A stretch of DNA of 64,000 bases from Ramazzottius varieornatus (GCA_001949185.1 BDGG01000003.1:5143092-5207091), one strand, 5' to 3'; shown: positions 2,544-27,500, counted from the first letter of the stretch. The notes: a model not told the origin generated them from the sequence alone. A program made the numbers and translations.

Positions 2544-5500
2544 ATGGATCAGCAAACGGGACAACCGAGCGAGCAGGAAATCCAAAGTAAGTGTCGTCGT
2601 GTCAAACTGCAGCCAGATATCTTCAGCATCTGAAGTTCACCTCTGTTTTTTCCCAGAGATCATCTTCGCTTTGGTGGAGGCTGAATCGGACAAGGAGAAG
2701 GACGAGCAAGTGCGCAGTCAGCTGGCCACGTCCACCTATGCCATCGGCGTACGCCATCACAGACAAGCCCTTCTCGCTCTTCTGGCATTTTACAGGCAAC
2801 CGGTACCGTAAACCTCTCACTTCTTCCGAATCTGTGTCAGCGAAAATTCGCTATAGATCTCAGAGGAATTTGTTGGAATGGCGGAATATTTTCAGACATG
2901 TACGAAGCTTCAGAAAATGCTGATACTGTTGTCCATCAATGCTATCATTGACCACGACGAAGTCCTGTCCAACATGGACCAAGAATTGTCTATCCAGATT
3001 ATCCAAGCGGCAGTGGACGCAGTCGTAGACAAGGTAAGACGTGTCTGCAACGAAAAAGAGAACTGGGAGCTCTGCGAAGGAACTCCACACGATTACTTTC
3101 CGACGTGGCGCATGTTTGCAGTGTTGTTGTTCGGAAACGTGCGCCACTTGGGAAATACATTCAGTGGTCGAGTGCAATGGTTTCCGAAGTGGTGCACGTT
3201 TTCAGGATAATGGGCTGAAAACGCGCGCCACTTGGACAAATGATCTTGCCGAGTTTGCTTGCTTAGGTTTTGCAAACTCCAACTGTACAAGTATGGCTGT
3301 TGTGGTTCTAGGAGATGGTCGAAATCGGGAGTGATATCTTGGTGACGATGAGCCGCAGTCACTGCATCGAAGTGATGAAACAGATGCTGAACCTCTTCCA
3401 ACCCGGCCACCTTCCAGCTCCCTTCACATTCCAAACGTTCGGGCGTATCTTCTCGACCAACGTCAACGATTCCATACCGTTTCTCAGCGCGGTCTTGAGC
3501 ATGACGGTACCGTTGTTGGGCGAAGCCAAGTCCGACGCACTGAAACGCTCTATAGCTGGAGGTAGGTTCATCTGATTGTAAGTAAATTTCTTCTGATTGC
3601 AGTCGAGATGGTTTCTTGCGTTTAGCGGTGTCGCAGTTTGGGGAAGCCATCCTGGAGTACGCTGCGAACGAGTCGGACAACCCGGAACCTAGCGTCAAAG
3701 TCAGCTTCTTTCAACACGACTTCAACGCCATTTTCGAACATATTCTTCTCCACTGGATGCCGAAAATTCGCGATGCCGAGCAAGCGGCTTACATGATCCA
3801 TGCGCTGAGCTGTCTGGCGAAAGTGGTGTCCAAGGACAAGCTTCAAGAACTTGTAGGTATTTTCTTCGTGTACCGAAACAAATTTTTGATTTCTGAGGTG
3901 ATTTCTGCAGGCAGATAAGTTGTTGGGAACGGCCATCGCGATAGCGCGTCGCCATCCTCATGAATCCAGTGCTTCCGAAGGCCTGGCCATCGTGCTGGAG
4001 AACGCAGCTTCGAACGCCAAAAGTACGTTGGAACCGCAGCTGGACCAACTGATCGATGTCATATTTGCTCAAGTAAGGCGATGCTTTTTTGTACGTACAC
4101 TATAGTGTAATGCTGTGCGTAGGTAGGTGACGGAATGTTCTTTCAGGCATGTCTTCCTCCCGATTATTCAAAGCCTTTCGCCGTCAAGTCCCACAACGAA
4201 CTTCTCCGCTGCTTCAACATACTTTACCTGAACTTCCCCGATCGCATCTTCCAGTTTCTTCTGAGCAAACTCAGCCCCAACGTCCTGAAGTCCACCGTCA
4301 GCAAGGATGCCAATGACCGCTCGGTGGTCGGCGCTTTGACTATTATCAACAAGCTGGTCAACCAACAAGGTATACCATTGTATCCAATATCTGAAAGGTC
4401 GGCAAACGACACGGAAGAGGGCGTCATCTCAAGTGGCGCACGTCTTCGTCGTTGTTAGCTGGAAGCGTGGGCCGCCTGATATAATGGCACCGTAACTGGT
4501 GCATCCTACCGACCAATAACAATGGAGGCGTGCGCCATTTGCACTGCCGTTATCTCAAGTGGCGCACGCTTCTATGTTACTGGATGGACATCTGCGCCAC
4601 TTGAAATGCAATTTTGCATGTTTCGTTTACCGGCCTTTATTCAGTGTTCGCCCGATCTTTATTGTGTTCTCTTGTTTTCAGATATTAGTTTTTCGTTCTA
4701 CTTGGTGTCGTTGCTCAAGTCGCTCGAGCCTGTCGTTACACCAAGTCCAACCATCCCGCTGTCGAACAATGTGAAGCAGTCCGTCGCTCAGCTGATCCTG
4801 ACGCTAGCCGATCGATTGTACCTGACCGAAGAAAACTCGGGTCAGCTGGTCGAGTTTATTATTCGGCAGTGTTCGCTCCCGGCGACCAACATTCCCCGCT
4901 CGCCTTCCGGTTTGGACTCCGTCACTGATGAGTCACTCCGCGCTTCCTGCGAGAACGTCCTGCACCTTCTGACCACCACGGTGCATGGCATGGAGAAGAT
5001 TCTCTTGCCCAGCCTCTTCGACTATCTCGGTAATTAAGGCATGGAGTTTGAAAACAGCGAAAAAGTGCATCACTTACACAGTCACCATCTTGAGTGGCGC
5101 ATGCTCTCAGCCAATAAAAATTAAGACATGCGCCACTTGACATGACGAATTTGCACGTTTCGTCTGGCGGCCTCCCATTTGTCAGTTTTTTCATACTTAG
5201 TCAATTTCACAGATTTTTTTCGTAGTTATGTGGCAGTATACGGAGTCTGTGAGGACTGTCTCGAAGTGTCTCGTTCACCTCAGCACTAAACAAGACATTT
5301 TCGCTACGTTGAATGCGGCAGGAAGTACGCGAAGGAGTCCGACCTTGGTGGAGCTCTTCACGAGGCTGACCGTGCTAGCGGGCTTCGTCTGGGAGAAGCC
5401 GGACGGGGACTCGCTATTGTCTCTCTTGCAGCTGGTTAGTGGCAGGATGTCAGCGGCCATCAAGGAAATGTGGGATGGTACACTGGGGGAACTTGGAAAG

Positions 5501-8500
5501 TTTTTGACGAAAGCCATGGATTCACCTGGCGGTGAATGGGACTCGAAAGCCTGGGAAGACTCCCTAATCAAAGTATGAAATACAGCCTAGAAAAAATTTA
5601 GATTAGCTCTGATATGAAGTTTCGGTGAAGAACAGGAATAGTTTTTATCCGATACCGTTTTCCAAAGTGGCGCACGATCACAGTGCTGTTGACTGAAAGT
5701 GTGCGCCACTTGGAGAGACGATGTTGTCAAGTCTTATTGCCGAGCTCCAAGATTGAATTTTGAATTCAGGAATATTGTATCTGAGATGGTCCTTGTTTTT
5801 CCCAGCTTCTTCAAACAACTCTTCGGGATCTGAAGACGGTCGAGCCCGACCTAGTCCACCGCATCGCCGAGTCCTTCGCTTTGCAGATCCCACTCTACAC
5901 CGACTCGCCCAACGAGAAGGCCTTCCTGTACCTGTGCCTTGGTTCCACCCTCGAAGTCTCCAGCGACCCTCTGATCGTCAACAAAGCCCTCGACTCCATC
6001 TTCAACTCGGTCAACCATACCAAGATCGTCGAGCGCCAGGCCTGCGGTATCGGCATCGGGCGCGCCTGCTCGTCCCATTTCGAGCTGATCCTCAGCAAGC
6101 TCGACGCTTTCGCTCTAACCGACAAACCCGGCAAGAGGTCCAGCTTTCTTAGCATGTTCTCCAGTAAAGAGAAGATTGAGTCGGTAGATTCTGAACGAGC
6201 TAAAGCGACGATCGTGCTGTGTTATGGTTACGCAGTAGCCGGTGCTCCGAAAGCCCTACTCTTAGCTAAAGTAGACGATATCCTGCGCTCAGTCATGCCT
6301 TTCTTCGTGGGTGTGAAAGACTTCTCGATCAAGCATTCGCTGTGTCGGTTCGTGGAGATGCTGGCCAAGGCTACGAAGGACACGAACTCGGGGCTGGATA
6401 AGAGGCCGAATTTGCTGTTTCACATGAAGGACTTTGTTAAGTCAGAGTCGACTGAACTGAGATCGTCGGTGAGGGCGTTGGCCATTACGGCGGCGTCGGA
6501 GCTGGTCTTGTTGTCTCCGAAGATGCCGGTAGAAGAAATGGAGGATGCGTTGGTTCTGTTTTCGAATAGCGTGTTTCCGCTGCTGCCACCCAGACATGAT
6601 CAAGCGACCAATCTGACGATCGAAGCGGCGAACACTGCTTACTTAAATTACGAGGTGAAATAATATTTTTCGTTCGTTCCGTTTGAAAAAATTAACTGAA
6701 AAATGAAATTCTGATAAATCCAACCCTGCAAATTTGTTTTTTTCAAGTGGCGCACCCACTCAGTGTTATTGGCCTGTAGCATGCGTCACTTGGAACAGGG
6801 ATCGGGTCGAGTTTGACTGTTACTGTATTACCTCTAAGGTTTCGCGCAGTCACGTGAGCGTGCGCCACTTGAAGGACTTTGAGGGACTTTGATGAGGGAC
6901 TTTGATGACATGAAGGACTTTGATCCCAAGTGGCTCACCGTTCCAGTGTTATCTGCTGGAAGCGTGCGCCGCTCTGAGAAACGTTCTTGTCTGGTCTGCT
7001 TGCTGAGTTCGCCCTTGAAGTATAAAATCAACGTCAATTACAATAAGCAGAAAATGAGAGAAAATGCTTCGTAAAACTGGAAATAAAAAACTGTAATTTT
7101 AAAACAGGTTTTTGTTTCTGGTTTCATTTTTTTCCGGTCTTCAGGTGTTGTGGGAAGCGACTGTCAAAGCACTGTCAGAATTTATGGTGACGATCCTGAA
7201 GGTGCACCGAAGTTCGGAAGCTATGCAAGCCATCATCAAGAACCTCAAGCCGTGGTTGGAGTCTGATTCTGACCACGAAAGACATCACGCATTGCAGATG
7301 TTGAACAACGTTCTCGGAAGCGACGTGGTGACGGAGAACGTCGTGGCTTCAATACTGGGGAGCACTGCTGGCATCATTGCCACCAAAGCCATGGACCCCG
7401 ATGTTCGGTGCCGCGAAATGGCACTGAGCTGCACGAAACTTCTGTCTGCGGTCGTTTCCGGTAATAACACACCCAGAAACTTCAGAACCTGCATAGACTG
7501 GATTTCAAAATATAGAGAGTCGGCTAACAGCTTTGTTAAGATTTTCATCTCAAGTGGCGCAAGTTCTTTCTGCTATAGGCCGAGAGCGTGCGCCACTTGA
7601 AAAACGATCTCGAGACTCGAAAAGATTGATTTGCCAAGTGGCGCATGTTCGCAGTGATATTTGCTGGAAGCGTGCGTCACTTGGGAAAACAGTTTGGGTT
7701 GATCTGTTCGCCAAATCTGTTTATTTTATATAAAGTCGTTCCAGGTGGGAAGAACGCATCCGACCTTCCATCAGTGGATATGCCCAGTCCCTCTCACGCC
7801 AAGAACAACCTCTCAAGTTACGCTCTAGCTGTCTCGACCTTCTACAACCAGATGTTGGACGAGGACCAACTGACCAAGTTTGTCCGGCAGCTGTACTACC
7901 AAGGCCTGTTAGAGAAGCGAGCAGTAACTGCTGCGGGGACCGGCGCTGTCCTGCAGACTACACTGAAGGGTAAATGGCCAGTACTGAAAGAACACGGACC
8001 CGAGATCGTGGGGGGACTCCTGTACGCTCTGAAGTACGTCAAGGACCCTTCCACCAAAGTCGCAGTCGAGCGATGTGTCCACACCATTGCCGAACACGAC
8101 ACGGACCTGGTCGCGAGGATCTTACTGAATCAACCTGTACCACTTCACCAGTAAGCCCACTAGCTTCGAAAACCTGCTGATTTTGATTGAATGGCACACG
8201 CTTGCAGCTAGTGACATCGTAAACGTGCGCCACTTGTGGAAGCAATTAAACTCGACAGGATGTTCATCTGAGTGGCGCACTCTTTCAGCCAATGCCACCG
8301 GAAATGTGCGGCACTCGGGGAAAACAATCTTCTCGAGTTTGTTTGCTGAGCCCCGAAAGCAGAGATTTCGCTTGAAATGTAGTCTACAAACTGATTCGGA
8401 AATTGAAATTTATTTCGAAGTAATTCTGGTGTCTTTTAAAATTTTTCAGGTCGACAGCGGATCTGTGGCGGTCTCTCGGTTCGGTTCCCTCTTTCGCCCT

Positions 8501-10066
8501 TATTCTTCTCCTGCACTGCATCGAGGCTCTTCGGACAACGCCGCCTTACTCCGAGGTCCACGCCCACGCACGCATCGTCAATCTACCCATCCTGCAGTCG
8601 CTCAGCGTTCTCACCGAACTCTTCCAGGCCACGGGAAACACCGAACTCCTGCAGGCCAACTTTGCCGATCTGGCCTCCATTCTCCTCGTCATAACAGCCA
8701 CCATGGTGGGCGCACAGACAACGCGTCCTCCACAAGCGGCTAGCACCACCGAACAGACGGCTGTCGACTCCGAATGGAAGGTAAATGACAACGCTTAAGC
8801 GAAAAGCAGGAAAAAAATCCGGAGACATAAATCATGAAACTAAAAATTGTTAGAAATTGTTAAGTTGTTAGAAATTAGACTAAACTGTAGAACAAAGTGT
8901 ACTACAATATGGAGTAGGTTCGGTTAATTTTTGGTGATTTTGTTGCAGCAGGTGTATAAGCTTCAGCCGTCCAAAGTGGCCATCGGTACTCTGAAAGAGC
9001 TTCTGAAGAACACAAACTGTGTCGTGCCGATCTCCTTCGAGATGATGGAAGACACGACCATGTATGCCGAAGGTCTTCATGTCACGGCCAAGTGTATTTT
9101 CCAGTCGTCAAACATCAACACCAAGAAAGTCATGGAGAACCTAACCGGGTACCTGAACAGCGACATCGAAGCTCAACGCGCGGTCGCAGCTGCCAGTCTA
9201 TCTGCGGTAAGATGAACCGAAATGTAGTATCTGGCAGCTCGGCGAACAACCCGACAAGGTTGTTTTCCGGGTAGCGCACTCCTTCAGCTACCATCACTGA
9301 GAATGTGCGCCGCTTGAGGAGCAGGCTTGTCGAGCTTTCATTGCTTCGCCTTCCTTGCGGAACTTCCGGCTTTCATTCGTTTTGTTGCTGTGCTTGCAGA
9401 TGCTTGAAAGCAAAAAGCCAGAGAAACCAGCGGCCGTTACGGAGATCGTCGGTCATCTGGCCGCGAAGAACTCCGACCAATCGGCTATAGTACGCATATT
9501 CTGCATACGTGGACTTGGGAGTCTTGTCAACTTCGGCCCAGAAATCGTAAGTGCAATTTTGTCGAAAAACTTCGAATCTAATTTCCCGTCTCCGAAGTCT
9601 GTTGTGCACTTAGGTGAATATTCACGCGGATAGTGTGATAAAGGTCATCCTCTCCGGTCTGGAANNNNNNNNNNNNNNNNNNNNNNNNNNNNNNNNNNNN
9701 NNNNNNNNNNNNNNGATATGCAGTTGTCTGGTAAATAAAATGAGTCGTGTGGTTGTTTGACATATTGAGCAGTAAAGGTCTTGGCACAACGACTTCGTTC
9801 GACAGGGAAGTGAGTACGCGGAGAAGATTCCCATGTATCTCAACCTGGTGATTGGGTACTTCCGGTCGGAAAGTGCCACGCTGAGGGCGAATGCTGCGCT
9901 GTTGGCCGGTAATCTGCTGGCCCAAGCTTCCAACTCAGCGAACCCTGACACGGTTCCCAGTCATGTCTCGCCGGCTGTCATACACTTGCTGGCTGACAAA
10001 GAACCGATGGTCAGACTAAGAGCGGCGGAAGCATTGGGGTTGATGTATCAGAAGGCCAGCCACTGA
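2544..10066 (+). CDS. MROH1: Maestro heat-like repeat protein (MROH1/HEATR7A-like), about 16-17 exons, with an assembly gap near the 3' end
   Basis: ATG at 2544 and spliceable exons (e.g. 2657-2801, 2897-3033, 3312-3561, 4147-4369, 4682-5029, 5226-5572, 5806-6654, 7145-7460, 7746-8150, 8450-8780, 9400-9546, last exon ending TGA 10066). Motifs KSHNELLRCF, VTDESLRASCENVLHLLTTTV and ATIVLCYGYAVAGAP, plus C-terminal HEAT repeats (LLADKEPMVRLRAAEALG), match the MROH1 family. Confidence 0.85.
6870..6925. repeat. Short tandem repeat (gaaggactttga/gggactttgat) in a MROH1 intron
   Basis: Four imperfect 'ggactttga' units. Confidence 0.7.
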
Positions 10067-11261
10067 ACGTGCGTTTTTATTCTTCGACGGCCATTGTTTT
10101 CTATTCATTTCATTGCTTGATTGTGATCATCTTTTTCAACTTTCTTCCGTCTCTGAGCTTTTCATTCTCTTCCCTTGTATGTGCCGCTTGCAGTTTTGAT
10201 GAAGAGTTTCGGTACTGTGCGATTGATAGTCGTCTGGCATTGCTACATCGAAGACGCTTCTTTTATTACTAGCTAGTTGGGCCAAAAACTGAGAATACTA
10301 ATCGAAGGTACTTTGAAACATGAAGGTGGAAGGGTGCACGGGCTTGGCTATTCTCTAAAGCTTTATTTTTCGACGTTGCAAGTCTGTTTGTCGTTCTCGG
10401 ATCCTGGTGCCGCTGGTATTTTGTATGTAATCAATCAACAAGCAGCAATCAACTGCCGTATTCAGATGACGTCATCGCGGCCTGGCTTCGCAACGATTGA
10501 TTTGGTATTGATTGCTCAGCTTCATCTTCATAATGTTGTGGTTTTCATTTGGGGATTGGGATTTTGGGATTTGATTTCTGAATCGTTTCTGCGCACCTTT
10601 TTGTCTGATTCTCCATACCAAACTGTAGACTTCGCTGTAGCGATCGATCGTAGTCTGCTTCCTGCCTTATAGGTTGCGGATTAGGTATTGAAGATATACT
10701 TCAACAGCTTGAAAGAGGCGAATACTATTTCGCCTGGTTTTGTACTATCATAGTCACTGATTCTCTGCCGATCCTTACCAAGCAGCGGTGGACGGGTGAT
10801 TTATTCAGTGAATTGTCCAAAACACGTAACGGCTTCGCAGCCTCAAACGCAGCTCAGTTTTGGAACGGCAATCAGTCGATCGTTTTTTTTCATTTGAAAA
10901 ATACCGTTCCGAATGTTGTTCGAACACCGAGTTTCCAGTTCAGTAGAGGTGAAATTCGCTTACTAATGACAAAAACTGCCCGTTGTACCGGTTCTTGACA
11001 GGTCGTAGGTGGCTGTTCCGTGAGTTTCGATATTAGGCTGAATATATCATCCGTTCACCGCTCTTACCAAGTAGTCTTTTGTTCCTTTCTACTAAAGTTG
11101 CAGCAGTGGTTCAGTAAACGGAACGTTAAAGGGTTTTTCGACTTGTTTGCCACTCTACGATGTATTGTATTAATAGAAACACACATATCTAGGAACGACT
11201 TCGCCGTGGTCTGGGACGAGATTCCAGTACTTACGGCATGAAATCTCTATATAGCGAAGAT

Positions 11262-11885: not shown

Positions 11886-11989
11886 CTAGAAAACCATGTT
11901 CACGTTTTGACAAATGAAATGGCTCAGCAGAATTGAAACCACAGATGCATAACACGACCCATCATGCTCAGTACTTACAGCGCGCTTTG

Positions 11990-12548
11990 ATAACACACCC
12001 AGAAAACTTCCGAACCTGCATAGACTTGATTTCAAAATATGGAGGGTTGCCCAACATGCGTTTGGATTGTCTCCTCGAGTGGCGCAAGTTTCTTTTGTTA
12101 TTGACCAAGAGCGTGCGCCACTTGAAAAACGATCTCGAGACTCGAAAAGATTGGTTTCCCAAGTGGCGCATGCTCGCAGTGGTAATGGCTGGAACCGTGC
12201 GTCACTTGGCGAAACGATTTGAGTGAATCTGTCCGCCAAATCTGTATATTTCATAGAGTCGTTCCAGGTGGGAAGAACGCATCCGACCTTCCACCAGTGG
12301 ACATGCCCAGTCCCTCTCACGCCAAGAACAACCTTTCAGGTTACGCTCTAGCTGTCTCGCCCTAATTCTTCTGCGTTGCATCGAGGTTCTTCGGACAACG
12401 CCGCCTTACTCCGAGGTCCACGCCCACGCACGCATCGTCAATCTACCCATCCTGCAGTCGCTCAGCGTTCTCACTGAGCTCTTCCATGCCACGGGAAACA
12501 CCGAGCTCCTGCAAGCCAACTTTGCCGACCTGGCCCCCCTTCTCCTGG
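11990..12548 (+). pseudogene. Duplicated MROH1 fragment (copy of ~7465-7837 fused to ~8495-8685)
   Basis: Near-identical text, e.g. 'gtcgttccaggtgggaagaacgcatccgaccttcc' and 'cttcggacaacgccgccttactccgaggtccacgcccacgcacgcatcgtc'. It includes the intron with both dyads. Confidence 0.92.
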
Positions 12549-13569
12549 GCGGCCCAGGTCGCATACGCTGTTAAAAGTTCACAATGATTCGAAACTCGAA
12601 GAGTAGCATTCATGGTCGCGTCTGGTAAACATTGCTACATCGAAGACGCCTTTTTTTATCGTAACTCCAAATACTGATCAAAGGTACTTTGAAACATGAA
12701 GGTGACAAGATGCAGGGCGTGGCGGTTCTTTGGAGTTTTGTTCTTCGACGTTTGAAGTCCCTCTGTCGTTCTCGAATCCTGCTACCGCTGGTACCTTGTA
12801 TGCCATCAATCAGAGGTTGCTGGAGAGGTCACAAAGTGGCATGAAAATAGGTCCACCACAACTTGACCTCTTTGACTCAGGGTTTAACAATTAGGCCACA
12901 TTACTGCACGGAACATGATTGTTATTCTTAGTGGCGCACACTTGCGATTAATAACACTGGAAAAGGGCGCCACTTGAGATGACGACCATGTTCGGTTCAT
13001 TTGCCGCCGCTACGTTTATCTTTGTCAAACATCAAATCATAGATGTGGTTCTTGTCTTGTTGTAGACTCTATCTATGACCAATCCGCACCTGCTTGCTTT
13101 GCGTCTTGGTGATCCTGTTACGATGAGTGACATAATCGATATGCAACTTGGTATTGACCAGATACTCAAGGAGCTGGAACGAGACGAATACTATTTTGCA
13201 AAATTGGTTAATCATCTAAAGAACGTCGAGAGTAGTCGCTTTCTCTACTGTACTGCCTAATTTTTGATTTAGAACCGTTTGTCACGGTTCGAATGGCTTC
13301 AGCCAATACAGTGTATACGCTCGGGAGATGATAGCTCGGCAAACAAACACGACCGGATCGCTTTCACAAGTGGCGCACGTTTCTAGTGTTGGGGGCTGAA
13401 AGCGTGCGCCACTAGGAAAGCCGATCTGGTTGAGCTTGTTAGCCGAACTCGCAAATATCTTCCGTAGTTTCTTCCATTCAAATAAAGATGTCACTTGCGA
13501 GAAAAGGTATTTCATTCGAGGCCACAGTTTAGCATCGAGAAACATTTCAGATCGTGCTGCTCGAGAGAA

Positions 13570-16025: not shown

Positions 16026-16603
16026 GCATTGGCAAGTCCGCTGTGTTCACCTCATACTGAACTCAAATACGGTCAACAGCTTCGCGATACGTTCGCCACT
16101 GAGAAGCTTGGCTACAGACTTTTATGTTCAAGTTTGTGATACCTAGATTCATACACGCAACGTCGCACGGATCGCGCTTCGTGCAAATCTGACGACCCTA
16201 CGGCGGCGTTCGCAAGAACTCTAGACTCTTTTCGGCAAGCCAGCGTTATTCTTCGTTCCGCAGGGTTTTTCCCCAGATGGTGTCCGTCGGTCCAAAACAG
16301 ACGACTGGTGTCAGCGAGATTTCGGCATACTTAGGACGCATATTGGACCATAAACCAATGTTACTTTTTCAACAGACGATATTTGCTGTATTGTTTGTAA
16401 TTGAGCCAGCGAACAATCAAGAGTGTTGACCATGGTCGTAGCATATGAGAAACTATTGGGTTCGACTGATGTAATGCTCGCGATCGCGCTCTTTTGCACT
16501 TGGCGGAAGAAAGCCGAACGGATCTTTCCACTGCAGTTTTTGACATTAGCACTTCCACCATCAGCTGCTTTCGGTTAGGCTAATACAATTCAACAGCTAG
16601 AGC

Positions 16604-19600
16604 ATGGCTCGCCGCAACCGAAAGATCCTGGGAAGTACCAGATTGTTTGGCATGTTGTACGGATTACTTTGCCTGTATCCGGTTTTCTTTCCGGTATCCG
16701 CCCAAAAGACGGAGATTCCGTATGGTGGAACCGTATTACCGCTAAACGGGAGTACCACCACGGTGTCTACACTCGGAAACTCTACACAGGCATTGGTGTG
16801 CTCAACCGATGCGTGCGTTTCTTTGGGTAATTTTATGGTTGTGGTGAATTAGAGTACACCGTTATGGACAGCATCCGTGCTGCGACAGAGATATTCCGAA
16901 ATTTTCAGCGAACCAGTTCTTGTCATCAGTAAACTTCTCGGTGGATCCATGTGACGATTTCTACGCCTTCTCTTGCGACAACTATATTGCCGCTCGACCC
17001 CTCAATGGAGCACCAGGGATCTCCGTTGGGCTGGAGGTGACTCGTCGAGTAGGGAGCAATATCAAAGGTAACACCTTTACGAGAACGGGTTGCTTTTCTG
17101 CCTTCCTGTACATAAGAATGGTCTACTTTACAGAGATGCTGCAGCTGACACCTGAGGACTATTACGTGTATGATCAGACAGACGCAGAAGTAAAAGCAAA
17201 ACGCGCTTATAACCAGTGCGTCGACAATCGTGAGTGTCACTCAGTGCAAAATGGGTGCGGTTCCGTGCGAAAACACAGAATCACAGCCCGTTCAAGCAAA
17301 CTTGTCACGATCCTTTCAAAAAATCGATTCTCTCCTGTTAACGATTTCTGGGAGTTGTTTCTAATTTGATCTAGTATCTGATCTAGTACGTACTGCACGC
17401 GCTAGGGCTTGAGTGAAATCAGGCACGCTGGATTTTACAGACTTGAATTTCAGAAAAAGAGTTGATGCTTGGTCGGATGACGTCCCTCACCCAATACACC
17501 CTTACTGTCTCTTCTCGGCAGCCAACGCTAGTTTCAAAGAATTTGTTTCCGTTTGATTCTAGCAGCTTATCGACAGGGCTTTCACCCGTGACCTAAAAGA
17601 TAGGCCCGAAAGTCTCACCGTCAATTTTCCAACAACATTAAAAAGCTAGTGGTGACAACTTTGCTCGAACGGGCTGTACTTACATTGCCGCCACTTTCAG
17701 GCCTTTTCGGTTCGTTCAACGCCAAAGCATTGCTGACATTCATGAATGCAGTTTTGCCGGGGGGATGGCCAATAATAACTCCCAACTGGGACCCTTCGCA
17801 ATTTGATCTTTTCACTGTGCTCCTCGACGCGGCTGTTTATGGCGTTCAACCGTTCTTCATCACGGAAGTCATCCCTGATTTAACTGCTCCTACGCAAAAT
17901 CTCCTCGCTTTTGCCCAACCCACAACTTTTGCTTCGAAGGACACGCTGAACAGTGAGGACGGAGCGGACACTGCCTCGTCTTATCTACAGCAGATTGTGG
18001 AGACCACGCAACTTATTCTTAACAATACGGAAGGATCTCGTCCAGTATCCTCCATTCTAAACGACGCTATCGACATCGTCGACCTCGAAATAAACATCAC
18101 GCTGGTAAGCCAGGCTGCCCCTTGTTTTAAGAAGACAATGTCAGAAACACTCCCCAGTCGGCATCAATCTTTATTCTTCTATCGCACGCAGACTGATGCA
18201 ATGAGTATTACTGTGGCGACACGTATATTTCAAATTCTATGTCAGGCGGGGTAATATTTCTGACATCGCAGAAAGGAGGCCAGCAAGCCAAAAACGCATA
18301 ACCGTTGTCTGACGTGGCGCAAGTTCTCGTTACTATTGGCTAGAGCGTGCGCCACCCCCCAAAACGACCTCAAATAAGGTTTTGCCTTCAGTGGCGCACG
18401 CAGTCAGTGCTATTGCCTGATAGCATGCGTCACTCAAGAGGACGGTCATGTGAGTTTCGTTTGCCATTGGCCTTCCGGGTTTTAGCTCCAGCGTTCAGTA
18501 CGAACATCCTCCAAAAGCCGGAATTCCAGGTCGGGCTTAACACAGTACAGGAGGGAGACATTACGCTTTATACAAACAAAACCACGTTTGGCTTCTTTCA
18601 AGACGCGGCGCTGAGACGATCCAGCTTGTTTCGGCGATTCATCGACTTCCACAGAGGCTTCCTCGCCACCGCCAGTGTCAGTACCCCAATCGATCGAAGC
18701 ACCATTGTGGTTCCGGTGACGTTCGAGGTCTTTGCTAGCTTGGATGAGATCGTGGCATCCTTGGAAGTAATGGGGAGCGAAGGCAAACGCCAGCTGGCAA
18801 ACTACATTGGATGGCAATTGATTAACGCTAACTTCCCATTTCTGTCGAAAGACGTTCAGGAGATTCGCGAGAAACATCTGCGACGAATTAAAGTCATGAA
18901 CGAAGATACTCCTCCAGTGGCAAACCAGACGGAGACCACCTGCATCAGAACACTGCAGGCAGCTTTGCCTCTGGCATTGGAACTGCTTTATGTCAAGAAA
19001 TATGTACCCTCGGACCTTCAGCCCAAAGTACGGTGTATTCTCTCTCGTTGTCAATTGCTCTTCGAAGTCATCGATGATCCCATAGTTTTGAGAATTATTG
19101 CTTCAGGTTGCGATGCTGATTAGTGACACCGAGATGGGTTTCGCCGAGTTGCTGCGACAAGCTTCCTGGATGACCAGCGCAACCAAAGATCTGGCCTTAC
19201 AAAAGCTTGACAACATGCTGAACTTTGTGGCTTTCTCGAACGAGGTTGTGAACAACAAACCGGCGGTAAACGCAGAATACAGCCAGGTAAGTCGAGGCAA
19301 ACTCATGCACGAAAAGGCTATGCTCTTTCTCAGTGGATGTCGAACATCGGCAGCGAGCTCAGAGAACAAGCTCGACAAGATTCCTTTCCCGAGTAGCCTG
19401 CACCATTCGGGTAAACAATTATGTCGAGTGCCTTCGCCTGGGTCCCAGTACTAGTACTCCTGTACTTGACGTTGCTTTTTACCGGTACAACACTCCGTTG
19501 CAGGTTAGGATTGAAGCCACGTTCTTCAACACGATACAAACCGTTAAGAGATATTTGGTGAACAAAAATTTAAAACGATTGGACATGGTCAACGTCAGAT

Positions 19601-20728: not shown

Positions 20729-21969
20729 TTTGCATGCGACGAATCTGCATTACTCATGGCTCAGTAACTGTTACTCAATTTTGAACTTTAGTTTTAGCAC
20801 TGTGAAGACTTTGATGATCTGAATAAATTGATACCGGATAGCGGAGTCAGGAGACCTAACCCTATCAAATATTTTCGTAAATTGTTACGTAACGCTTCCC
20901 ATCTTCGAGGACTCGGCGGTTGCAATGGCAGTCCGAAAAACGAGCGCGCATCTATCCGTTTTGAAGTATGAAGTTCGGCCCGGTACAGGGGTAAAACCTG
21001 CAGCAACGAGAATCAGTGAGCTGCAACATTTTATGGTTTGGACTTTATTATGCATCCTTATAAACGCACGATCCGTACTTTTGTACTGCAAAACTTTTCA
21101 CTGAGATCAGTTTGGCCGTTGTTCAGCTGGACCTAGAACAAGCAGGACGCCACATAAGGACGCTAGCGCCAAAAGCCCGGAAATTACGCGGCGTAAAGAA
21201 TTCAAGTTAACTTCGGTGTCTTTATTCAGAACCTGCGTAACGTACGCAGGTTCTGAACGCTCAGGGCCGGCCGACCCGGCCCTGAGTGTGCCAACCCCCC
21301 GCCCCCTAGGAGAAACATCGAAACTTGGTTTCGCGGTAAACTGGGCCATCTTCCCACAAGGGGAAGAACTAAGGGTCTCGTTGTGACGTGAACAGCACCT
21401 CGAAAAGAAGTAAAAATAGCAAAAATCGTAGAAAATTTAGGAATTCCACGAGATAAACAGTCAAAGATCCAGCAGATCCTGTCAAAAACTGAACCCGATA
21501 CTAGCTCACACATGCGTACCACTAAGAGTAATTGGTCGTTCAGTTGAACGACCAATAGCATTTTCGATCCGTCGCACTGAAGTAGGCGGCGCATTCAACT
21601 GTGCGTAAGTCCTTGATTCTCCCTTGGACTTTCAGGTCCGACAAGACCGAAAGTTCGGATCGGCCAATCTCCAGCTGGCTTTCAGTCTCAAAACCAATAT
21701 TTGTTGATGACTTCAGATCATGTTTACTGTTTTAGATGGGTATATCAAAATAACAAAACTGACAAGTGGGACTTTGGAATTCCAGATTTTTGCGAGGACC
21801 TTCTGGAGAAGGAAATAGGAATATAGGAATACTAAGAATTTCTTTCCTATTTTCCATTCCAGGGGCATTCGGCCTGGAATTTACAACCTTAACTTTTGGT
21901 GACTTCCGGTCATTTCCCGAAGTTTTGAAGTTTTCCCCTAGGGGGGTTGAACGCATAGATTCCCAGGGT

Positions 21970-22146
21970 CCGTTCGGTTCTGAGCAGAGGAGGTAATCCA
22001 GATTTTGGTTCCCTTTTGTTATTATTTTCGACCAATGTGAATAAAAATTCGGTTCCCTCTCGTTCCTGTTTTTCTTCCCATTGGTTGTAAACAGGAACGA
22101 AAGGGAACCGAAACCCGGCTTACCTCCTCTGCTCAGAACCGGACGG
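21970..22146. mobile_element. MITE with ~45-bp TIRs
   Basis: ccgttcggttctgagcagaggaggtaatcc ... ggcttacctcctctgctcagaaccggacgg. Confidence 0.75.
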
Positions 22147-22850
22147 TAATGCTGTAACATGCTGGTCATTGTAGACAGAGCAGAATCAATACTTTTTGGA
22201 TTTCTTCTTAGACTTATTGAGGGAATAGTTCTTTCTAGTTAGACTCTACGCCGAAAGTATTTGCGCCAAATGAGCTTGTATGTATTCTTGCAGGGAATTG
22301 ATTTTCTTGATTCCCGCCTTTGCCGAAGCTGAGTTCTTCTCCCTGAATGCTCAGACCTTGCAAACGTGCTCTAAGATCGGAGTAATGCAGTCAGTACATG
22401 TACAGTAGTATTAAACGAGTTAAACCTGCACACCTGCCTGGCCTANNNNNNNNNNNNNNNNNNNNNNNNNNNNNNNNNNNNNNNNNNNNNNNNNNCATTT
22501 AGGCCAGGCGCGTGTACGTAAAAAAAACACCACATCTGCATATACAAACAGAAACTCCCTTATAAGTCCGCAAAGTTCTTTTGCCTTGAACAGTTTGACG
22601 ATCCCAATGTTCTCTGTTCATACATTATCAAGATATCATCGCGCGTGAGGATCACGTTCCACATGATTTTTCAAGCGTTCACCTTGAGTGCCCGTGCTGT
22701 CTTGGTGAAGCTTATGAAAAATGGAACTGTCCTGAATAGAAAAATGGAACATCTGAATGTCAGAGTCGGCCACTAGCTGCTTAAGCTGAAATTGAGCTCG
22801 ATTGTGGTAACCTCGCCTTGTGTGCTTGATTTGACTTACTCTTGGCTTGC

Positions 22851-22992
22851 AGGAGGCCTCCGAAGCATACTTGACTGAAATGATAGACGATGCCAGTTTG
22901 TGCGCCATCCATGCCAAGCGAGTCACCATCATGGCCAAAGACATCCGGCTGGCATGCCGTGTACGAGCAGAATTATCTGGCTGCTCTTTTTA
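22851..22992 (+). pseudogene. Divergent histone H3 C-terminal exon (variant or pseudogene)
   Basis: [47 protein letters not shown], preceded by a ttgcag acceptor. A degenerate FRPG-containing upstream segment with stops lies at ~22498-22590, next to an assembly gap. Confidence 0.75.
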
Positions 22993-23433
22993 AAAATTGC
23001 TAGCTTCATGTCAGAACTGCTGCCGTGTAACACCCATGCTTCCTAATGGCGGAAACTCTAAACTCGGCTCATTTTCCATTTGTTCTTTCTTCGCATGAAC
23101 TATAAATCAACCTCAGAATCGGATTTCTTAGGATGAGAAATTTCGAAGCACCCTCGCGGAAGAAAAGCAACGACCAGTGGTAACTGCAGTACCATGTTTC
23201 GGGTATCTCAAGTGATATCCATTTGCCAATCACCAGTTCTTCTCGAGAGTGTCTCGTCCCCGTTTGCTGTACCGTGGTGCGTAACTTAATCCCCAGCTCA
23301 GGGTAGAGCGCGAGAAGCACATGCTTGTCGCGCTCCACAAGCACAACTGAGTGAGAGCACTTGACATGCTCTCGTACAGCAAAAGACTGTCTGTCCACCT
23401 GCAGAAACTTATACCGCCGTGATCTTGCCTCTA

Positions 23434-24296
23434 GATATACTAGCTGGTATCCTCAACTCGCCATTCTACGATCCGCAGGTTCCGCAGTATCTGAATTACG
23501 GAACCATCGGTTTTGTCATTGGTGACGAAATCACTCACGGATTCGATACCACGGGTAAATCTTCATAAGCTTACGTGGATCGAAGGCCGGTAAGCAATCC
23601 CGCGATGGTCGTTAATCTGAGTGGCGCAGGTTTCCTGCCAATAACGAAAGAACAATGCGCCACTTGAGATAACGATCTTGCCGAGGGTAGTTGCGGCCTC
23701 TCAGCTTTTGTGTAGTACCAATAAACTGAGTCATGAGGCATTTTTAAGGAGCATTGTTCGATCCGAACCAGATTCTCCGTGTGTGGTGGGACGACGCAAC
23801 GCTCCAAGCATTCACTCGGCGAAGCCAAAGGATTGTCCATCAGTGCAGTGGATTCTGCATCCCGGGCATAGGCTGCGTCAACGGTCAGCTGACTGTTGGA
23901 GAGAACACCGCCGACAATGGTGGAATCAAAGCTGCTTATCGGGTACGTACTTACAGACAACTTTCGCTGTATGTCAGGCCCAGAAAAAGTATAGCAGGAT
24001 GTTTTTCACAGGCATATTTTGAGCACTTCAGTGGTCGAACGTCTGGGGTTCCCGAAGCTAGCCTGCCTGGATTCACCAACTTCACTTCCGAACAGATGTT
24101 TTTCCTCTCGGCTCGACACACTTGGTGTGGAACCGATCGACCAGATCGAGCCAGATTCTTTCTGCTGAACGATCCCTACAGTCCGGGCAAGTTTCGCGTG
24201 AATGGCCCACTGTCAAACTTCGACGAGTTCGCGAAGGCTTACAACTGTCCTGTTAGCTCCAAAATGAACCCAGTACAGAAATTTTCTGTTTGGTAG
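23434..24296 (+). pseudogene. 3'-partial duplicate of the neprilysin gene with lost catalytic residues
   Basis: The last three exons are paralogous to 19733-20728. HEITH becomes DEITH (ggtgacgaaatcactcac), GENIAD becomes GENTAD and DPHSP becomes DPYSP. No upstream exons were found. Confidence 0.85.
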
Positions 24297-24574
24297 CGCA
24301 CAAGAAATGAATTCGATTTGCTCGTTTCAAGACGATCGCTCGACCTTTACACAATGTAAAATAAAGAAAATTGAGCTCAGTTTCCGAATCTAAAAAAGCC
24401 GAACATCTCGGCCTCGTGGCCACTTCACAATACATTTCTTGTGGATTCTTAGAATTGTTTCTATGGGTTGCGAAAGGGAGCTCGAAGACTGCGCGACAAC
24501 TAGCCTGTTCGGCCATTGATCGCCGGTCGAATTAGTTGCGTCACAAGATATCGAGCAATGCTTTCAAATTTTCA

Positions 24575-27500
24575 CTATGTTGGATAAGTCTTTAACGCGT
24601 TCTGGCGCGGCCATCCATGGGAAGATGATCCTGCGACCCGGTTATAGCTGTCATCTGCTGTTGATCTTCTGCCGAAAGCTGAAATGCTCATGCCGGCCAG
24701 TCCTCGGACGTAATTTTCATTAATCAGCCACCAAGAGACTTCGTCCGAAGATTTTCTGGAAAATAAAGAAGGTTACTAGAATACATGTCTCCATTTATTC
24801 AGGATTTCAGCTGGTTGTAACGGACAACAACTGTACTTTCTTATGTGCGCGAGGATGACAGTCATGAAGGAAAGGACTACAATCAAGGAAACAGCGCAAG
24901 CCACAGCCGTTTCGACGTAGTGTGTGCTTTCTGTAATTACTCAACTTCATCAATAACAACAGTACGCAGTATACCATAGATTGGTTGAGATAACGATGGA
25001 ATAAACGACTGATGCTATCCATGGTAGTTTGTTTGGCGGTTATTAACCCACCCTAACTATTCAGAGTTGTGATCCACTGCCCCCCTTATGAGTGACGTTG
25101 CAGCCCATTTTGGCTACAGTTACAAATTTTTTGCCTTGTCGTTTCGGCAAATTATATCTCGCGTGATGCTAGCTGCGTAGTGCTTACTTACTGGTCGAGC
25201 ATACAGGATTTTTTCCGTCGTAGCCACAAACGGGGCGGTCTGGTACCGGCCAAACTGGTCCAGGCCATTCTATGGCATTTACCTCGCGCATTCCAAACGG
25301 ATCGGCTTGCATGTTCTGGAGCAACTGTCGTACACAAAAGAGATCCGTTATGTTTCGTGATACTGTACGAGTGCTGGCCACCCGGGGTGGAAATGCGAGC
25401 CTACTGAAAGTTTGCCATTCTGAGCGAACTGCTGCAAGGTGTAATCCCCGCCATATACTGCGCCAATCCGGTCGAACTTCAATCTTCCCGTCCGCAAGTG
25501 AAAATTTCGGTTGTAGAATCTCTGGGCAACGTGGGCACCATCATATCGCCATTCCGTTGGAGGGGACTGCAGTAGTTCCGTTGACACCTGTTTTAAAGTG
25601 CAGGGATATTTGTGTAAGTGATGCAACAAAAGTACGGGCGAAGTGTTGTAAACTTGCCGCCTCATACCGGGTTTGTAAAGTTAGCCCTCGCTGAAGCTTC
25701 TATTGCTTGATTGACTTTTTGATTGTCAGTCTTGGCTTTCAACATGGTATTTCAACATTTTTCTAATTTCTGATCCCTTGGATTCGGCACGTTCTAAACC
25801 CTGGGCCTGGCAATTGTACTTGGAACTTGTAATTGTAATTTGTAATTGTAATTTATATCTGTATTTTGTACCTGTAACTTGTAATGTTAAGAAAAATTCT
25901 GTGAAGATGGGTGGCGAACTGATGAGTGAAACATTCGGGATGCTGGAAGATAGAATGTGCAGGATCATTGGATCAAGTGGCGCACGGTGCCAGCCAGTGT
26001 CGATGAAAATTTGCGCCACTGAGATAACAGTCACGCACGCGCTGTTTTCCGGCCTCCGTTCCAGGAACAACGACTTTGACGTTTTGTACATACTTGTCCT
26101 GACTCTTTTGATCGACAATAAACAAAATTCTCAAAGGGGCTGAAATATTATGAGGACTGGAATATTTCAGACATATCTTTCGTAAGATTTCTGTGTAGCA
26201 CACCAAGATCCTTTTCATCAGTGACAGTACAGTGCCGAGCAGCGAGCCTTACTCAGCTGTTGTCGAAAACTAACCCGAAAACGTTTTTCAAATTTTAGCA
26301 GACAGTCTGGAAGTTGCTCTCTGAATAGCGGAAGAAACCAATGCATGCCTGGGCAAAAATTCTTTGAAGGTAGTGTCATCATCCCGACAGTAAGCTCTTT
26401 CGCAGTTGCCGGTTGGCGCCGAAACTGATTGCACCGGAATACCATACTTTCGACGTCAAGTTCAATTCGTATAATAATATTTTATAACCTATTCCATGGA
26501 CAGTCAAGGATTTTCGCCCAGACTGTGGAGAAGGTTTTCATTTAGCTTTGTGCTGGCATTTCAGCTTCGAATGCAGAGGATGAACCTACCTCCGTTGTCA
26601 GAATGGTAGACAAGCCGCTATTTTAATTTCTTCTGTCACTGATGGATGGGCTCATGTACGAAATACTGTGAGAGTTGCTCGATTTGTTCCGGGAACGGGA
26701 GGCTGAAACCAGCGCGTGTACAACCGTCATATCAGTGGCGTAAGTATTCATCAGTACTGGCTGGCAACGTGCGCCACTTGATACACTAATCTTGCACATT
26801 CTATCTTCCGGCATCCCGAATGTTTCACTCATCAGTTTTCCAACCATTTTCACAGAATTTTGCTGAACTTCACAAGTTACAAGTACAGAATACAGATACA
26901 AATTACAATTACAAATAACAATTACAAGTTCCAAGTACAAGTGCCAGGCCCAGGGTTTAGAACGTGCCCTTGGATTCTCTAAATACTCGTGTTGACTGAA
27001 CCCAATATTGTTCGAATAATAGCCCACTATTTCATCTATCGATCTCTCCATAAACGTTTGGGATTTAGTAGGAGAGAACAGGCGAACCTGGACGGCTAAC
27101 GTTACAACCTCTCTCTCGTAGTTTTCAGAGTTTAACGTGCACTCAACCGCGTATGGGTCTATGTTGCTCATTTTGAACCGGCGTTACCTGTATGTCCTCT
27201 ATGAGCCTCACCCAATCACTGTTTACTGATCACGTGGCTGAGTGCTCGTTAAACTCTTACTACAGCAATGGTTTGCTCTTAGATGTAGAAGTCAGACATC
27301 AAGATCGCAGGCGGTTACATCACGCTCCATTCCACTGCAGCCTTTGCGGGGAACAGTTGTTTGGAAAATGGATATCGGCATACGAGAATGCGTCCAAAGT
27401 GTTTTTCTCCGAATCAGTATTCTAATTGGCTTTGATGACCCTGACGTCAGGGCACTACCCGATGTGTCAGTTGTTTCAATATACCGCACCCATGAGTGCG

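What the first reader, a model, noticed from the sequence alone, without database searches (positions are those of the whole stretch)
3097..26785. Fixed-geometry dyad GTGGCGCA-N27-TGCGCCAC: half-sites and spacer length conserved, spacer sequence free
Seen: 23 copies with well-conserved 8-bp half-sites (often CAAGTGGCGCAC). The spacers differ heavily between copies, yet 21 are exactly 27 nt and two are 26 nt. The central ~9 nt is asymmetric and occurs in both orientations (TGTTATTGG at 6747, CCAATAA at 4496/5094/23621), an architecture like lox/FRT or REP sites. No complete copy was noticed in the last ~37 kb, despite many other MITEs there. Inference: a neutrally decaying MITE this diverged should show more indels and even decay. 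The pattern fits a selected binding site for a dimeric protein (recombinase, transposase or insulator; the half-site resembles the 3' AGRKGGCGC part of the CTCF motif) or a selected RNA hairpin.
Basis: partly seen in the sequence, partly recalled or inferred. Interest (0 to 1): 0.9.

Follow-up and report, generated by a model that had tools for sequence, protein, structure and literature searches.

The report
Palindromic intron repeat with conserved dyad
The 23 'dyads' are copies of an old, very abundant 119-bp palindromic mobile-element-like repeat that fills the long introns of a small animal genome, and its 10-bp inverted motif has changed about four times less than the rest, for a reason not yet settled.

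Summary
All 23 copies lie at 3105-26777 and none after 27 kb. The spacer is 27 nt in 21 copies and 26 nt in two.

The spacer is not free sequence. Each dyad is the core of a ~119-bp near-perfect palindrome: arm, AAGTGGCGCA, 9-bp inner stem, 9-nt loop, inner stem, TGCGCCACTT, arm. It occurs singly or in tandem arrays of up to five in the loci read (periods ~63-91 bp). The genome holds 2,846 exact dyads and roughly 10,000-19,000 copies.

In MROH1, every intron of 196-490 nt holds 1-3 copies, the 58-74-nt introns hold none, and a 168-nt intron had no hit. The two loop orientations are simply the two insertion orientations.

With copies found through their flanks only, half-sites are 92% consensus, against 64-76% elsewhere. 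There is no stem covariation, no G·U/A·C strand signal, no Rfam match and no target-site duplication.

My best reading is a MITE-like family whose dyad is a protein (transposase) binding site. Pure selection for mobility fits poorly: seven copies have no non-syntenic relative above 86%. One syntenic duplicate shows arms and spacers changing three times faster than flanking DNA while the dyad stays.

The scan had already noted this dyad on this same stretch.

The parts
3072..3162 (-). element copy; dyad 3105-3147, 27-nt spacer; in MROH1 intron 3032-3309
3179..3268 (-). element copy; dyad 3189-3231 (2 mismatches); same intron, 84 bp from the previous copy
4399..4469 (-). element copy; dyad 4433-4475; first of three units 63 bp apart in intron 4368-4679
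4494..4541 (+). element copy (weakest); dyad 4496-4538, 3 mismatches
4547..4636 (-). element copy; dyad 4559-4600, 26-nt spacer
5082..5169 (+). element copy; exact dyad 5094-5136; in intron 5029-5224
5650..5748 (-). element copy; exact dyad 5667-5709; in intron 5573-5805
6717..6818 (-). element copy; dyad 6747-6789; in intron 6653-7142
6916..7010 (-). element copy; dyad 6930-6972; same intron. A solo half-site remnant TGCGCCACTTG lies at 6861.
7520..7610 (-). element copy; exact dyad 7554-7596; first unit of a dimer in intron 7460-7743
7615..7714 (-). element copy; dyad 7638-7680; second unit of the dimer
8187..8246 (+). element copy; dyad 8191-8233; dimer in intron 8151-8449
8241..8349 (+). 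element copy; dyad 8272-8314
9235..9337 (+). element copy; dyad 9271-9313 (2 mismatches). Three 100%-identical copies exist elsewhere in the assembly.
12065..12135 (-). element copy; exact dyad 12079-12121; syntenic duplicate of the 7554 copy
12140..12239 (-). element copy; dyad 12163-12205; syntenic duplicate of the 7638 copy
12906..13007 (+). element copy; dyad 12931-12973
13336..13450 (-). element copy closest to the consensus (95 bits); exact dyad 13370-13412
18295..18368 (-). element copy; exact dyad 18314-18355, 26-nt spacer; between two ORFs with M13 peptidase hits (likely an intron)
18361..18468 (-). element copy; dyad 18391-18433; 77 bp from the previous copy
19355..19450 (.). two weak, degenerate remnants (E between 1e-3 and 1e-2), found also by the flank-only profile
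23583..23695 (+). element copy; exact dyad 23621-23663. It fills most of a ~180-nt intron of a second M13 peptidase gene. The paralogue has an intron at the same place without a recognisable copy.
25938..26051 (+). element copy; exact dyad 25977-26019; embedded in the left ~300-nt inverted repeat of a 1.2-kb transposon-like element (25786-26968)
26706..26816 (-). element copy; dyad 26735-26777; embedded in the right inverted repeat of the same 1.2-kb element

Best explanation
What it is. The dyads are the cores of an old, very abundant, non-coding palindromic repeat of the MITE (miniature inverted-repeat transposable element) kind. One unit is about 119 bp. It reads: outer arm TTGGGAGCTCGGCAAACAAACTCGACAAGATCGTTTTTCC, then AAGTGGCGCA, a 9-bp inner stem, a 9-nt asymmetric loop, the inner stem again, TGCGCCACTT, and the mirror arm. 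In the loci read, one to five units stand in tandem. Copies sit mostly inside pre-existing short introns and are spliced out with them. That is why the long introns carry them.

What the dyad is (inferred). The 10-bp inverted motif about 38 bp in from each end is most likely the recognition site of the protein that moved the element. A transposase bound as a dimer or multimer to subterminal sites is the model, as in P elements and hAT elements.

Why decay is uneven (inferred). Only this block had to stay intact for a copy to be a source of new copies. Source lineages therefore drifted everywhere else, and after activity stopped all positions decayed together by about 0.08-0.1 substitutions per site.

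What is shown and what is not. Shown: the anatomy, abundance, intron location, unbiased uneven decay and absence of RNA-type covariation. Inferred: the binding protein and the level at which the dyad was kept. Part of the evidence, listed under evidence against, points instead to a rate difference that arises after insertion.
For: Anatomy and abundance.
- Gapped and ungapped consensus of single copies show the 119-bp palindrome.
- Termini are TTGGGAGCTCGG.../...CCGAGCTCCCAA.
- A five-unit array stands in L001 and dimers stand in the window.
- The genome holds 2,846 exact dyads against 0 for the reversed control pattern.
- There are 67 profile hits in 200 kb of arbitrarily chosen DNA. Scaling gives about 10,000-19,000 copies.

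Intron location.
- RNA contigs from four studies define the MROH1 introns. The seven of 196-490 nt hold 1-3 copies each. The three of 58-74 nt hold none, and the 168-nt intron at 8779-8946 had no hit.
- A paralogous intron at the same position lacks a recognisable copy, so the element did not create the intron.

The dyad alone stands out.
- With flank-only ascertainment it is 0.92 consensus, against 0.64-0.76 elsewhere.
- The step is sharp at the inner edge: 120-132 consensus pairs at columns 44-47, falling to 55-65 at columns 48-49.

Consistency with selection for mobility.
- Common variants are in linkage disequilibrium. About 12 of 630 column pairs reach p<0.001.
- High-identity pairs are in mild excess: 49 against 20 expected at >=0.70.
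- Far-from-consensus copies have a few relatives at 78-81%, above the 74-77% expected as the chance best.
- Dyad mismatch counts are Poisson-like (mean 1.78, variance 1.34) and unrelated to the divergence of the rest. A pre-insertion filter followed by uniform decay predicts this.
- Passenger copies inside the 1.2-kb transposon show dyad changes at about the rate of the rest. Orthologous ends give 4/42 against 30/194.

Motif resemblance (a lead, not a test). CAAGTGGC also occurs in the Hermes/hobo left end. There GTGGC was proposed, and AAGT later shown, as the subterminal repeat bound by the BED domain (PMC10368747).
Against: - Seven ordinary copies, most with perfect dyads, have no non-syntenic relative above 86% identity anywhere in the genome. 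The same search does recover a 93% relative for the transposon-borne copy.
- A simulation of 'dyad needed for mobility, then neutral decay', tuned to the observed divergences, predicts nearest relatives at about 0.92, with a 10th percentile of 0.87. A single old burst with a five-fold slower dyad predicts 0.72-0.80. The observed values are 0.78-0.82.
- The mobility model survives only if activity ended about 0.1 substitutions per site ago, after amplification from very many diverged sources.
- Up to 8 subfamilies lower the divergence of variable sites only from 0.332 to 0.316.
- In the one clean syntenic duplicate the dyads differ at 1/44 positions and the arms plus spacers at 32/126. Unique intron DNA differs at 6/73 and the exon at 5/95. 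That is a rate difference arising in place.
- No target-site duplication was found, exact or mismatch-tolerant.
- The termini are no better conserved than the body.
- No autonomous partner was found or sought.
Confidence: 0.42

Rival explanations
1. The repeat family is the same, but the dyad is kept after insertion by purifying selection in nearly all copies. It would be bound by a host protein, for example a BED-finger, insulator-like or domesticated-transposase protein. The result would be an array of roughly 10,000 genome-wide binding sites.
For: - The sample is nearly star-like and subfamilies explain almost nothing.
- Nearest relatives match the single-old-burst simulation with a slow dyad.
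- The syntenic duplicate shows 1/44 dyad changes against 32/126 in arms and spacers.
- A few copies keep perfect dyads while the spacer and arms are unrecognisable, for example L045:2889-2930.
- The inner edge of the conserved block is sharp, as for a binding footprint.
Against: - Nearly all copies would have to be under selection. At most 4-5% of flank-anchored copies have decayed dyads, and mismatch counts show no unconstrained class. That is unusual for exapted binding sites.
- The two 10-mers are 37 bp centre to centre, about 3.5 helical turns, so they lie on opposite faces of straight DNA.
- In the syntenic duplicate the dyad (1/44) is not significantly slower than unique flanking DNA (6/73). 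It is the arms that are fast.
- Passenger copies in the 1.2-kb transposon lose dyad positions at an ordinary rate.
Confidence: 0.2
2. The dyad evolves at the ordinary background rate, and it is the rest of the palindrome that changes three to four times faster in place. Possible causes are hairpin-associated error-prone replication or repair, or short patches copied in from other family members. In the second case the invariant dyads serve as microhomology anchors, which would also keep the 27-nt length.
For: - Syntenic duplicate: arms plus spacers 25%. Unique intron DNA 8%, linker 6%, exon 5% (2 synonymous and 3 non-synonymous changes, as for one neutral branch of about 4%), dyads 2%.
- The changes are split evenly between both copies.
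- A third copy gives exon 97% against central dimer 90% identity.
- The family has a star-like, weakly structured phylogeny.
- Dyad decay is uniform and Poisson-like.
Against: - It rests on one locus.
- The substitution spectrum at variable columns is ordinary and flat over the four bases, with no CpG or deaminase signature.
- No arm-to-arm templating signal exists.
- Neighbouring units are no more alike than random pairs.
- If the burst were only about 0.08 substitutions per site old, any target-site duplication of 4 bp or more should still be visible. None is.
- No known mechanism spares a 10-bp block inside a hypermutable palindrome.
Confidence: 0.2
3. The dyad is kept at the RNA level. The GC-rich 8-10-bp stem would clamp the inserted sequence into a hairpin in pre-mRNA, either to keep effective intron length short or as a small-RNA precursor.
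For: - Most copies lie in introns of a genome whose ground-state introns are 58-74 nt.
- Seven of eight copies still fold well, at -21 to -37 kcal/mol with z-scores of -4.5 to -6.9, and the dyad forms the clamp.
Against: - There is no compensatory change. Pairing is only 2-3 points above shuffled.
- G·U and A·C mismatches are equally frequent and not overdispersed per copy (chi-square 138 on 145 df).
- The motif sequence itself is invariant, not merely its pairing.
- Copies inside a transposon, probably not intronic, keep the dyad too.
- Orientation relative to the host gene is mixed, 9 against 5 in MROH1.
- Rfam gives no match.
Confidence: 0.05
4. The pattern is an artefact of how copies were found, because copies were picked by their half-sites.
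Against: - Copies found only through their outer arms show the same contrast. The far half-site is 0.93 consensus against 0.64-0.68 for the stems.
- The whole-element profile finds the same 23 copies and no others.
Confidence: 0.02

Closest known systems
Palindromic MITEs made of two fused terminal repeats that carry the transposase-binding site (for example human Made1 / Hsmar1, bound by SETMAR; from my own knowledge, not checked here)
   Same: It is short, non-coding and nearly a perfect palindrome with a few unpaired bases in the middle. It is present in thousands of copies, many intronic. A protein-binding block inside each arm is the best-kept part.
   Different: - No TA or other target-site duplication was found.
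- The conserved block lies about 38 bp from the ends, and the tips themselves are poorly kept.
- Units occur as tandem arrays.
- No autonomous partner is identified.
Subterminal transposase-binding sites of P elements and hAT elements (Hermes subterminal repeats, PMC10368747)
   Same: A short protein-binding motif lies tens of bp inside each end, in inverted orientation, and is required in addition to the tips. The motif here, CAAGTGGC, contains both the AAGT and the GTGGC strings discussed for Hermes and hobo.
   Different: - The 8-bp target-site duplication of both superfamilies is not detectable.
- The termini do not read like hAT (YARNG) or P ends.
- The resemblance is an 8-nt string only.
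Transcription-factor or insulator sites spread by repeats (for example CTCF sites carried by rodent B2 SINEs; from my own knowledge)
   Same: One repeat family distributes thousands of copies of a short GC-rich protein-type motif through genes.
   Different: Here nearly all copies keep the motif, not a subset. The motif shares only GGCGC with the CTCF core. No binding data exist.
Bacterial REP/BIME palindromes and their RAYT transposases
   Same: They are dispersed short imperfect palindromes with a conserved stem base and a variable interior, without target-site duplications.
   Different: The host here is an animal, the copies are intronic, and the unit is 119 bp with long arms. No HUH-type enzyme is linked to it.
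Introner elements (MITE-like elements that create introns)
   Same: It is a MITE-like repeat found overwhelmingly in introns of a compact genome.
   Different: The splice sites lie outside the element, in unique DNA. The intron position is shared with a paralogue that has no recognisable copy. So the element entered existing introns.

Membership tests
MITE / non-autonomous DNA transposon | short, non-coding, high copy number, dispersed | tested here: met
   The unit is 119 bp. There are 2,846 exact dyads and about 10,000-19,000 copies on many contigs.
MITE / non-autonomous DNA transposon | terminal inverted repeats | tested here: met
   The whole consensus is a palindrome from TTGGGAGCTCGG to CCGAGCTCCCAA.
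MITE / non-autonomous DNA transposon | target-site duplication of fixed length | tested here: inconclusive
   No exact or mismatch-tolerant direct repeat of 2-10 bp appears at any offset in 28-49 full-length copies. The ends are fuzzy and the copies old, so a 2-3-bp duplication cannot be excluded.
MITE / non-autonomous DNA transposon | an autonomous element with the same ends that encodes a transposase | not tested
The 1.2-kb element that carries two copies has no convincing ORF.
lox/FRT-type tyrosine-recombinase site | about 13-bp inverted repeats around a 6-8-bp asymmetric crossover spacer | tested here: not met
   The spacer is 27 bp, itself a decayed stem-loop. The geometry criterion comes from established knowledge.
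CTCF binding site | 14-bp core CCASYAGRKGGCRS | tested here: not met
   The consensus TTTCCAAGTGGCGCACG shares GGCGC and a CCA, but three bases too close together. The motif is quoted from memory.
structured RNA / pre-miRNA-like hairpin under selection | compensatory base-pair changes, and G·U tolerated on the transcribed strand | tested here: not met
   Pairing is 0.484 against 0.462 shuffled in the stem and 0.539 against 0.505 in the arms. The G·T versus A·C heterogeneity test gives P = 0.64. There are no Rfam or tRNA hits.
introner element | the element supplies the splice sites or creates the intron | tested here: not met
   GT..AG joints lie in unique DNA outside the copies. The paralogue has an intron at the same place without a recognisable copy.
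hAT superfamily non-autonomous element | 8-bp target-site duplication, short YARNG termini and subterminal BED-binding repeats | tested here: inconclusive
   An AAGT/GTGGC-containing motif is present. There is no 8-bp duplication beyond a non-significant excess at the predicted boundary, 0.335 against a null 95% of 0.340. The termini do not read YARNG.
Helitron-type element | 5' TC and 3' CTRR ends, a single hairpin near the 3' end, and no inverted termini | tested here: not met
   The element is symmetric, with mirror arms and ends TTGGGAG.../...CTCCCAA.

The most novel reading that the evidence does not exclude
The four-fold slower change of the dyad arises after insertion, in essentially every one of about 10,000 copies. 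There are two forms of this reading. In one, a host protein occupies and selection keeps a genome-wide array of AAGTGGCGCA-N27-TGCGCCACTT sites. In the other, the palindrome's arms and spacers are locally hypermutable or exchanged between copies, while the dyads act as fixed anchors. Either would be an unusual, position-specific evolutionary regime inside a repeat family of a desiccation-tolerant animal.
Probability: 0.4. Interest if true: 0.8.

Novelty: new member of a known kind. Interest (0 to 1): 0.5.

Why it matters
- The family makes up roughly 2-3% of a very compact animal genome. By size and contig count the genome is probably the tardigrade Ramazzottius varieornatus; this is inferred, not verified.
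- The family accounts for most of the long introns seen here, so it matters for annotation and for understanding intron-size evolution in this lineage.
- I found no description of it in the searchable literature.
- The sharp, unbiased contrast between a 10-bp dyad and everything else gives a ready handle for finding the protein that binds it, whether a transposase or a domesticated relative.
- If the contrast arises in place, it would be a rare case of thousands of repeat-borne sites kept together, or of structure-dependent hypermutation. The paralogous MROH1 copy 50 kb upstream offers a direct test.

Tried and rejected
- Rfam at gathering thresholds and a tRNA scan of the whole window found nothing.
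- A homology search with a 292-aa MROH1 exon found nothing, because of the tool's length window. Pfam identified the genes instead.
- Covariation and strand-specific wobble tests for an RNA hairpin were negative.
- Mixture models with 1-8 subfamilies do not explain the divergence of the variable sites.
- Dyad decay does not correlate with decay of the rest.
- Neighbouring units of arrays are no more alike than random pairs, 0.512 against 0.504.
- Target-site duplications were not found, whether by exact k-mers or mismatch-tolerant scoring at all offsets.
- Base-specific or CpG-driven mutation does not explain the contrast. The spectrum is flat.
- The paralogous M13 peptidase intron could not serve as an empty site, because the introns are not alignable.
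- The interior of the 1.2-kb element gave no convincing ORF, so it is not a candidate transposase source.
- A metagenome scan for AAGTGGCGCA-N26-28-TGCGCCACTT returned 8 contigs. Seven have 56-73% GC and look bacterial, and one is an unrelated palindrome. None matches the element profile.
- Literature searches on tardigrade MITEs and on the motif string found nothing specific.
I did not try to read it through pattern searches.
- Low-depth chimeric RNA contigs joining different copies (tables 5 and 5c) are taken as assembly artefacts of a repeat, not as RNA processing.

Full report
**Observation**

An exact search for GTGGCGCA-N15-40-TGCGCCAC finds 10 sites in the window, where shuffles give none. 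Twenty-one have a 27-nt spacer and two have 26 nt. A profile of the whole element finds the same 23 and nothing in 27-64 kb. Two weak remnants near 19355-19450 appear at a looser threshold. Their continuity was not tested, and nothing here depends on it.

**Anatomy**

The flanks of the dyads are themselves inverted repeats. Alignment of isolated copies gives a ~119-bp near-perfect palindrome:

- outer arm TTGGGAGCTCGGCAAACAAACTCGACAAGATCGTTTTTCC
- AAGTGGCGCA
- CGYTTCCAG (inner stem)
- CCAATAACA (loop)
- CTGGAARCG (inner stem)
- TGCGCCACTT
- the mirror arm

So the 'spacer' is the inner stem plus the loop of the palindrome, not free sequence. The asymmetric centre seen in both orientations is the loop of an otherwise symmetric element inserted either way round. 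The window has 14 copies one way and 9 the other.

Units also stand in tandem. The period is 63-85 bp in the window and reaches about 91 bp in a five-unit array in L001. In a dimer the inner arms are truncated at CTCGAG, so the linker is itself a small palindrome.

The genome has 55.8 Mb in 200 contigs and holds 2,846 exact dyads, against none for the reversed control pattern. The profile finds 67 copies in 200 kb of arbitrarily chosen DNA, very unevenly spread at 0-11 per 10 kb. Scaling by the exact count gives about 10,000-12,000 copies, and scaling by density gives about 19,000.

From assembly size and contig number I take the organism to be the tardigrade Ramazzottius varieornatus (compare PMC5531438). 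The runs that hold the sequence are coded, so this stays an inference.

**Context**

Pfam hits identify MROH1 (+ strand, about 2.5-10 kb), a DFF40-like region (- strand) and two M13 peptidase genes.

RNA contigs from four studies define eleven MROH1 introns within 3000-8999:

| Intron class | Length | Copies |
|---|---|---|
| Seven long introns | 196-490 nt | 1-3 each |
| Three short introns | 58-74 nt | none |
| 8779-8946 | 168 nt | no profile hit |

The splice junctions lie in unique DNA outside the copies.

An M13 peptidase paralogue has an intron at the same position without a recognisable copy. The element therefore entered existing short introns and did not create them.

**Is the uneven decay real?**

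Yes. I built a profile from the outer arms alone and read inward from each hit, so the centre played no part in finding the copies. In 69 copies, identity to consensus was as follows:

| Segment | Identity to consensus |
|---|---|
| Near 8-mer | 0.915 |
| Far 8-mer | 0.929 |
| Flanking CAA / TTG | 0.80 / 0.84 |
| Inner stems | 0.675 and 0.638 |
| Loop | 0.757 |
| Far arm | 0.667 |

The inner edge of the conserved block is abrupt. At most 4-5% of flank-anchored copies have a decayed dyad.

Spacer length is peaked rather than fixed. It is 27 nt in 75 of the first 100 exact-dyad copies on contig 1 and 26 nt in 16. In a set found with the element profile it is 27 nt in 83 of 105. Equally long arm segments keep their length in only about 34-50% of copies, partly because alignments are truncated there.

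**What it is not**

- Not a selected RNA hairpin.
  - Watson-Crick pairing is 0.484 in the inner stem against 0.462 after shuffling partners, and 0.539 against 0.505 in the arms. Double (compensatory) changes are rare.
  - G·T and A·C mismatches are equally common and not overdispersed per copy, as they would be if one transcribed strand mattered.
  - Rfam and tRNA scans are empty.
  - Copies still fold well, as any imperfect palindrome does.
- Not a base-specific mutational effect. Variable columns are 0.32-0.34 diverged whatever the consensus base, with an ordinary transition excess and no CpG effect. All four bases are three- to five-fold slower inside the dyad.
- Not lox/FRT-like in geometry.
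- Not a CTCF core.
- Not an introner.
- Not Helitron-like (see the membership table).

**Why is the dyad better kept?**

The usual answer for a MITE is that the block is the transposase-binding site. Source lineages must keep it while drifting elsewhere.

Several results fit that answer.
- Common variants show some linkage disequilibrium.
- Similar pairs are in mild excess.
- Far-from-consensus copies have a few relatives slightly closer than the chance best.
- Dyad mismatch counts are Poisson-like and unrelated to the divergence of the rest.
- Copies carried passively inside a 1.2-kb transposon lose dyad positions at about the ordinary rate, 4/42 against 30/194.
- The motif CAAGTGGC contains the AAGT and GTGGC strings discussed as BED-domain sites in the ends of Hermes and hobo. 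This is a lead only.

Three results do not fit it.
- No close relatives exist. Seven ordinary copies, most with perfect dyads, have no non-syntenic relative above 86% in the whole genome. The search readily finds the 93% relative of the transposon-borne copy.
  - A simulation of 'dyad required for mobility, then neutral decay', tuned to the observed 0.33 and 0.09 divergences, predicts nearest relatives at about 0.92.
  - A single old burst in which the dyad changes five times more slowly predicts 0.72-0.80. The observed values are 0.78-0.82.
- Up to eight subfamilies explain almost none of the variable-site divergence, which falls only from 0.332 to 0.316.
- In the one clean syntenic duplicate (7462-7838 against 11990-12366) the divergences are very uneven:

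| Segment | Differences |
|---|---|
| Dyads | 1/44 |
| Linker | 2/35 |
| Unique intron DNA | 6/73 |
| Exon (2 synonymous, 3 not) | 5/95 |
| Arms and spacers | 32/126 |

  The changes in the spacers are split between both copies. Here the body of the element has changed about three times more than its neighbours, and the dyad no more than they have. A third copy, 50 kb upstream, gives exon 97% and central dimer 90% identity.

The mobility model can be rescued if activity stopped about 0.1 substitutions per site ago, after amplification from very many diverged sources. That rescue is strained.

I therefore keep three readings open:
- a mobility filter alone (0.42);
- purifying selection in place on a host-bound site (0.2);
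- fast change or inter-copy exchange of everything but the dyad (0.2).

The RNA-level reading gets 0.05 and the ascertainment artefact 0.02.

**What could not be done**

No target-site duplication was found by exact or mismatch-tolerant tests, so the superfamily cannot be named. No autonomous partner was sought. The metagenome scan found nothing related, and the literature searches found no description of the family.

The decisive comparison is the ~14 syntenic element pairs of the paralogous MROH1 copy on the same contig.

**Verdict**

The object is an undescribed member of a known kind, a palindromic MITE-like intron-filling repeat. 'Free spacer' and 'selected RNA hairpin' are not supported.

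The cause of the dyad's persistence is open, and some evidence points to a difference that arises after insertion. That keeps the finding moderately interesting.

Noticed in passing
window 11990-12411 (+) versus 7462-7838 and 8494-8585: A fragment of MROH1 (intron with its element dimer plus parts of two exons, with the stretch between deleted) is duplicated 4.5 kb downstream, inside the DFF40-like region. A third copy lies about 50 kb upstream at C3:5095187-5095561 on the minus strand, apparently part of a paralogous MROH1 gene.
   Followed up: partly
window 25786-26968; L009:1309-2488: A 1.2-kb transposon-like element has ~300-nt inverted repeats starting GGCACGTTCTAAACCCTGGGCCTGGCAC. Each repeat embeds a full dyad element. 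The outer repeat halves are more alike within one copy (91%) than between orthologous ends (82%), which suggests homogenisation of the two ends. Further copies lie at C8:2007970, C3:1268801 and C17:134829. No convincing ORF is inside.
   Followed up: partly
window 9235-9337: This element copy has 100%-identical matches on two small contigs (C104, C135) and at C3:5208632-5208734 on the minus strand, just past the window's end. It lies about 330 bp before the assembly gap at 9665-9714. This may be assembly redundancy or a very recent inverted duplication.
   Followed up: no
window 22433-22510: The gap at 22446-22495 is flanked by an inverted repeat (gcctggccta ... taggccaggc), as if the assembly broke inside a palindrome.
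   Followed up: no
window 3624-4367: One RNA contig of run X17 differs from the window at 47 of 612 exon positions and has two 1-nt indels. From 4680 onward it is identical. It is probably a chimera of transcripts from MROH1 and its paralogue, or from another strain.
   Followed up: no
window 6975-7010: A short tandem repeat (caaagtccct-type units) abuts an element copy. The same 37-38-nt motif occurs twice in L031.
   Followed up: no
window 12700-12830 versus 10315-10437 and 63720-63796: Another dispersed repeat, at 79-84% identity and unrelated to the dyad family, flanks the copy at 12906.
   Followed up: no
L051:40-170 (metagenome contig JAAUYB010018826.1): An unrelated long perfect palindrome in a 47%-GC contig happens to contain AAGTGGCGCA-N26-TGCGCCACTT, flanked by T/A runs.
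   Followed up: no
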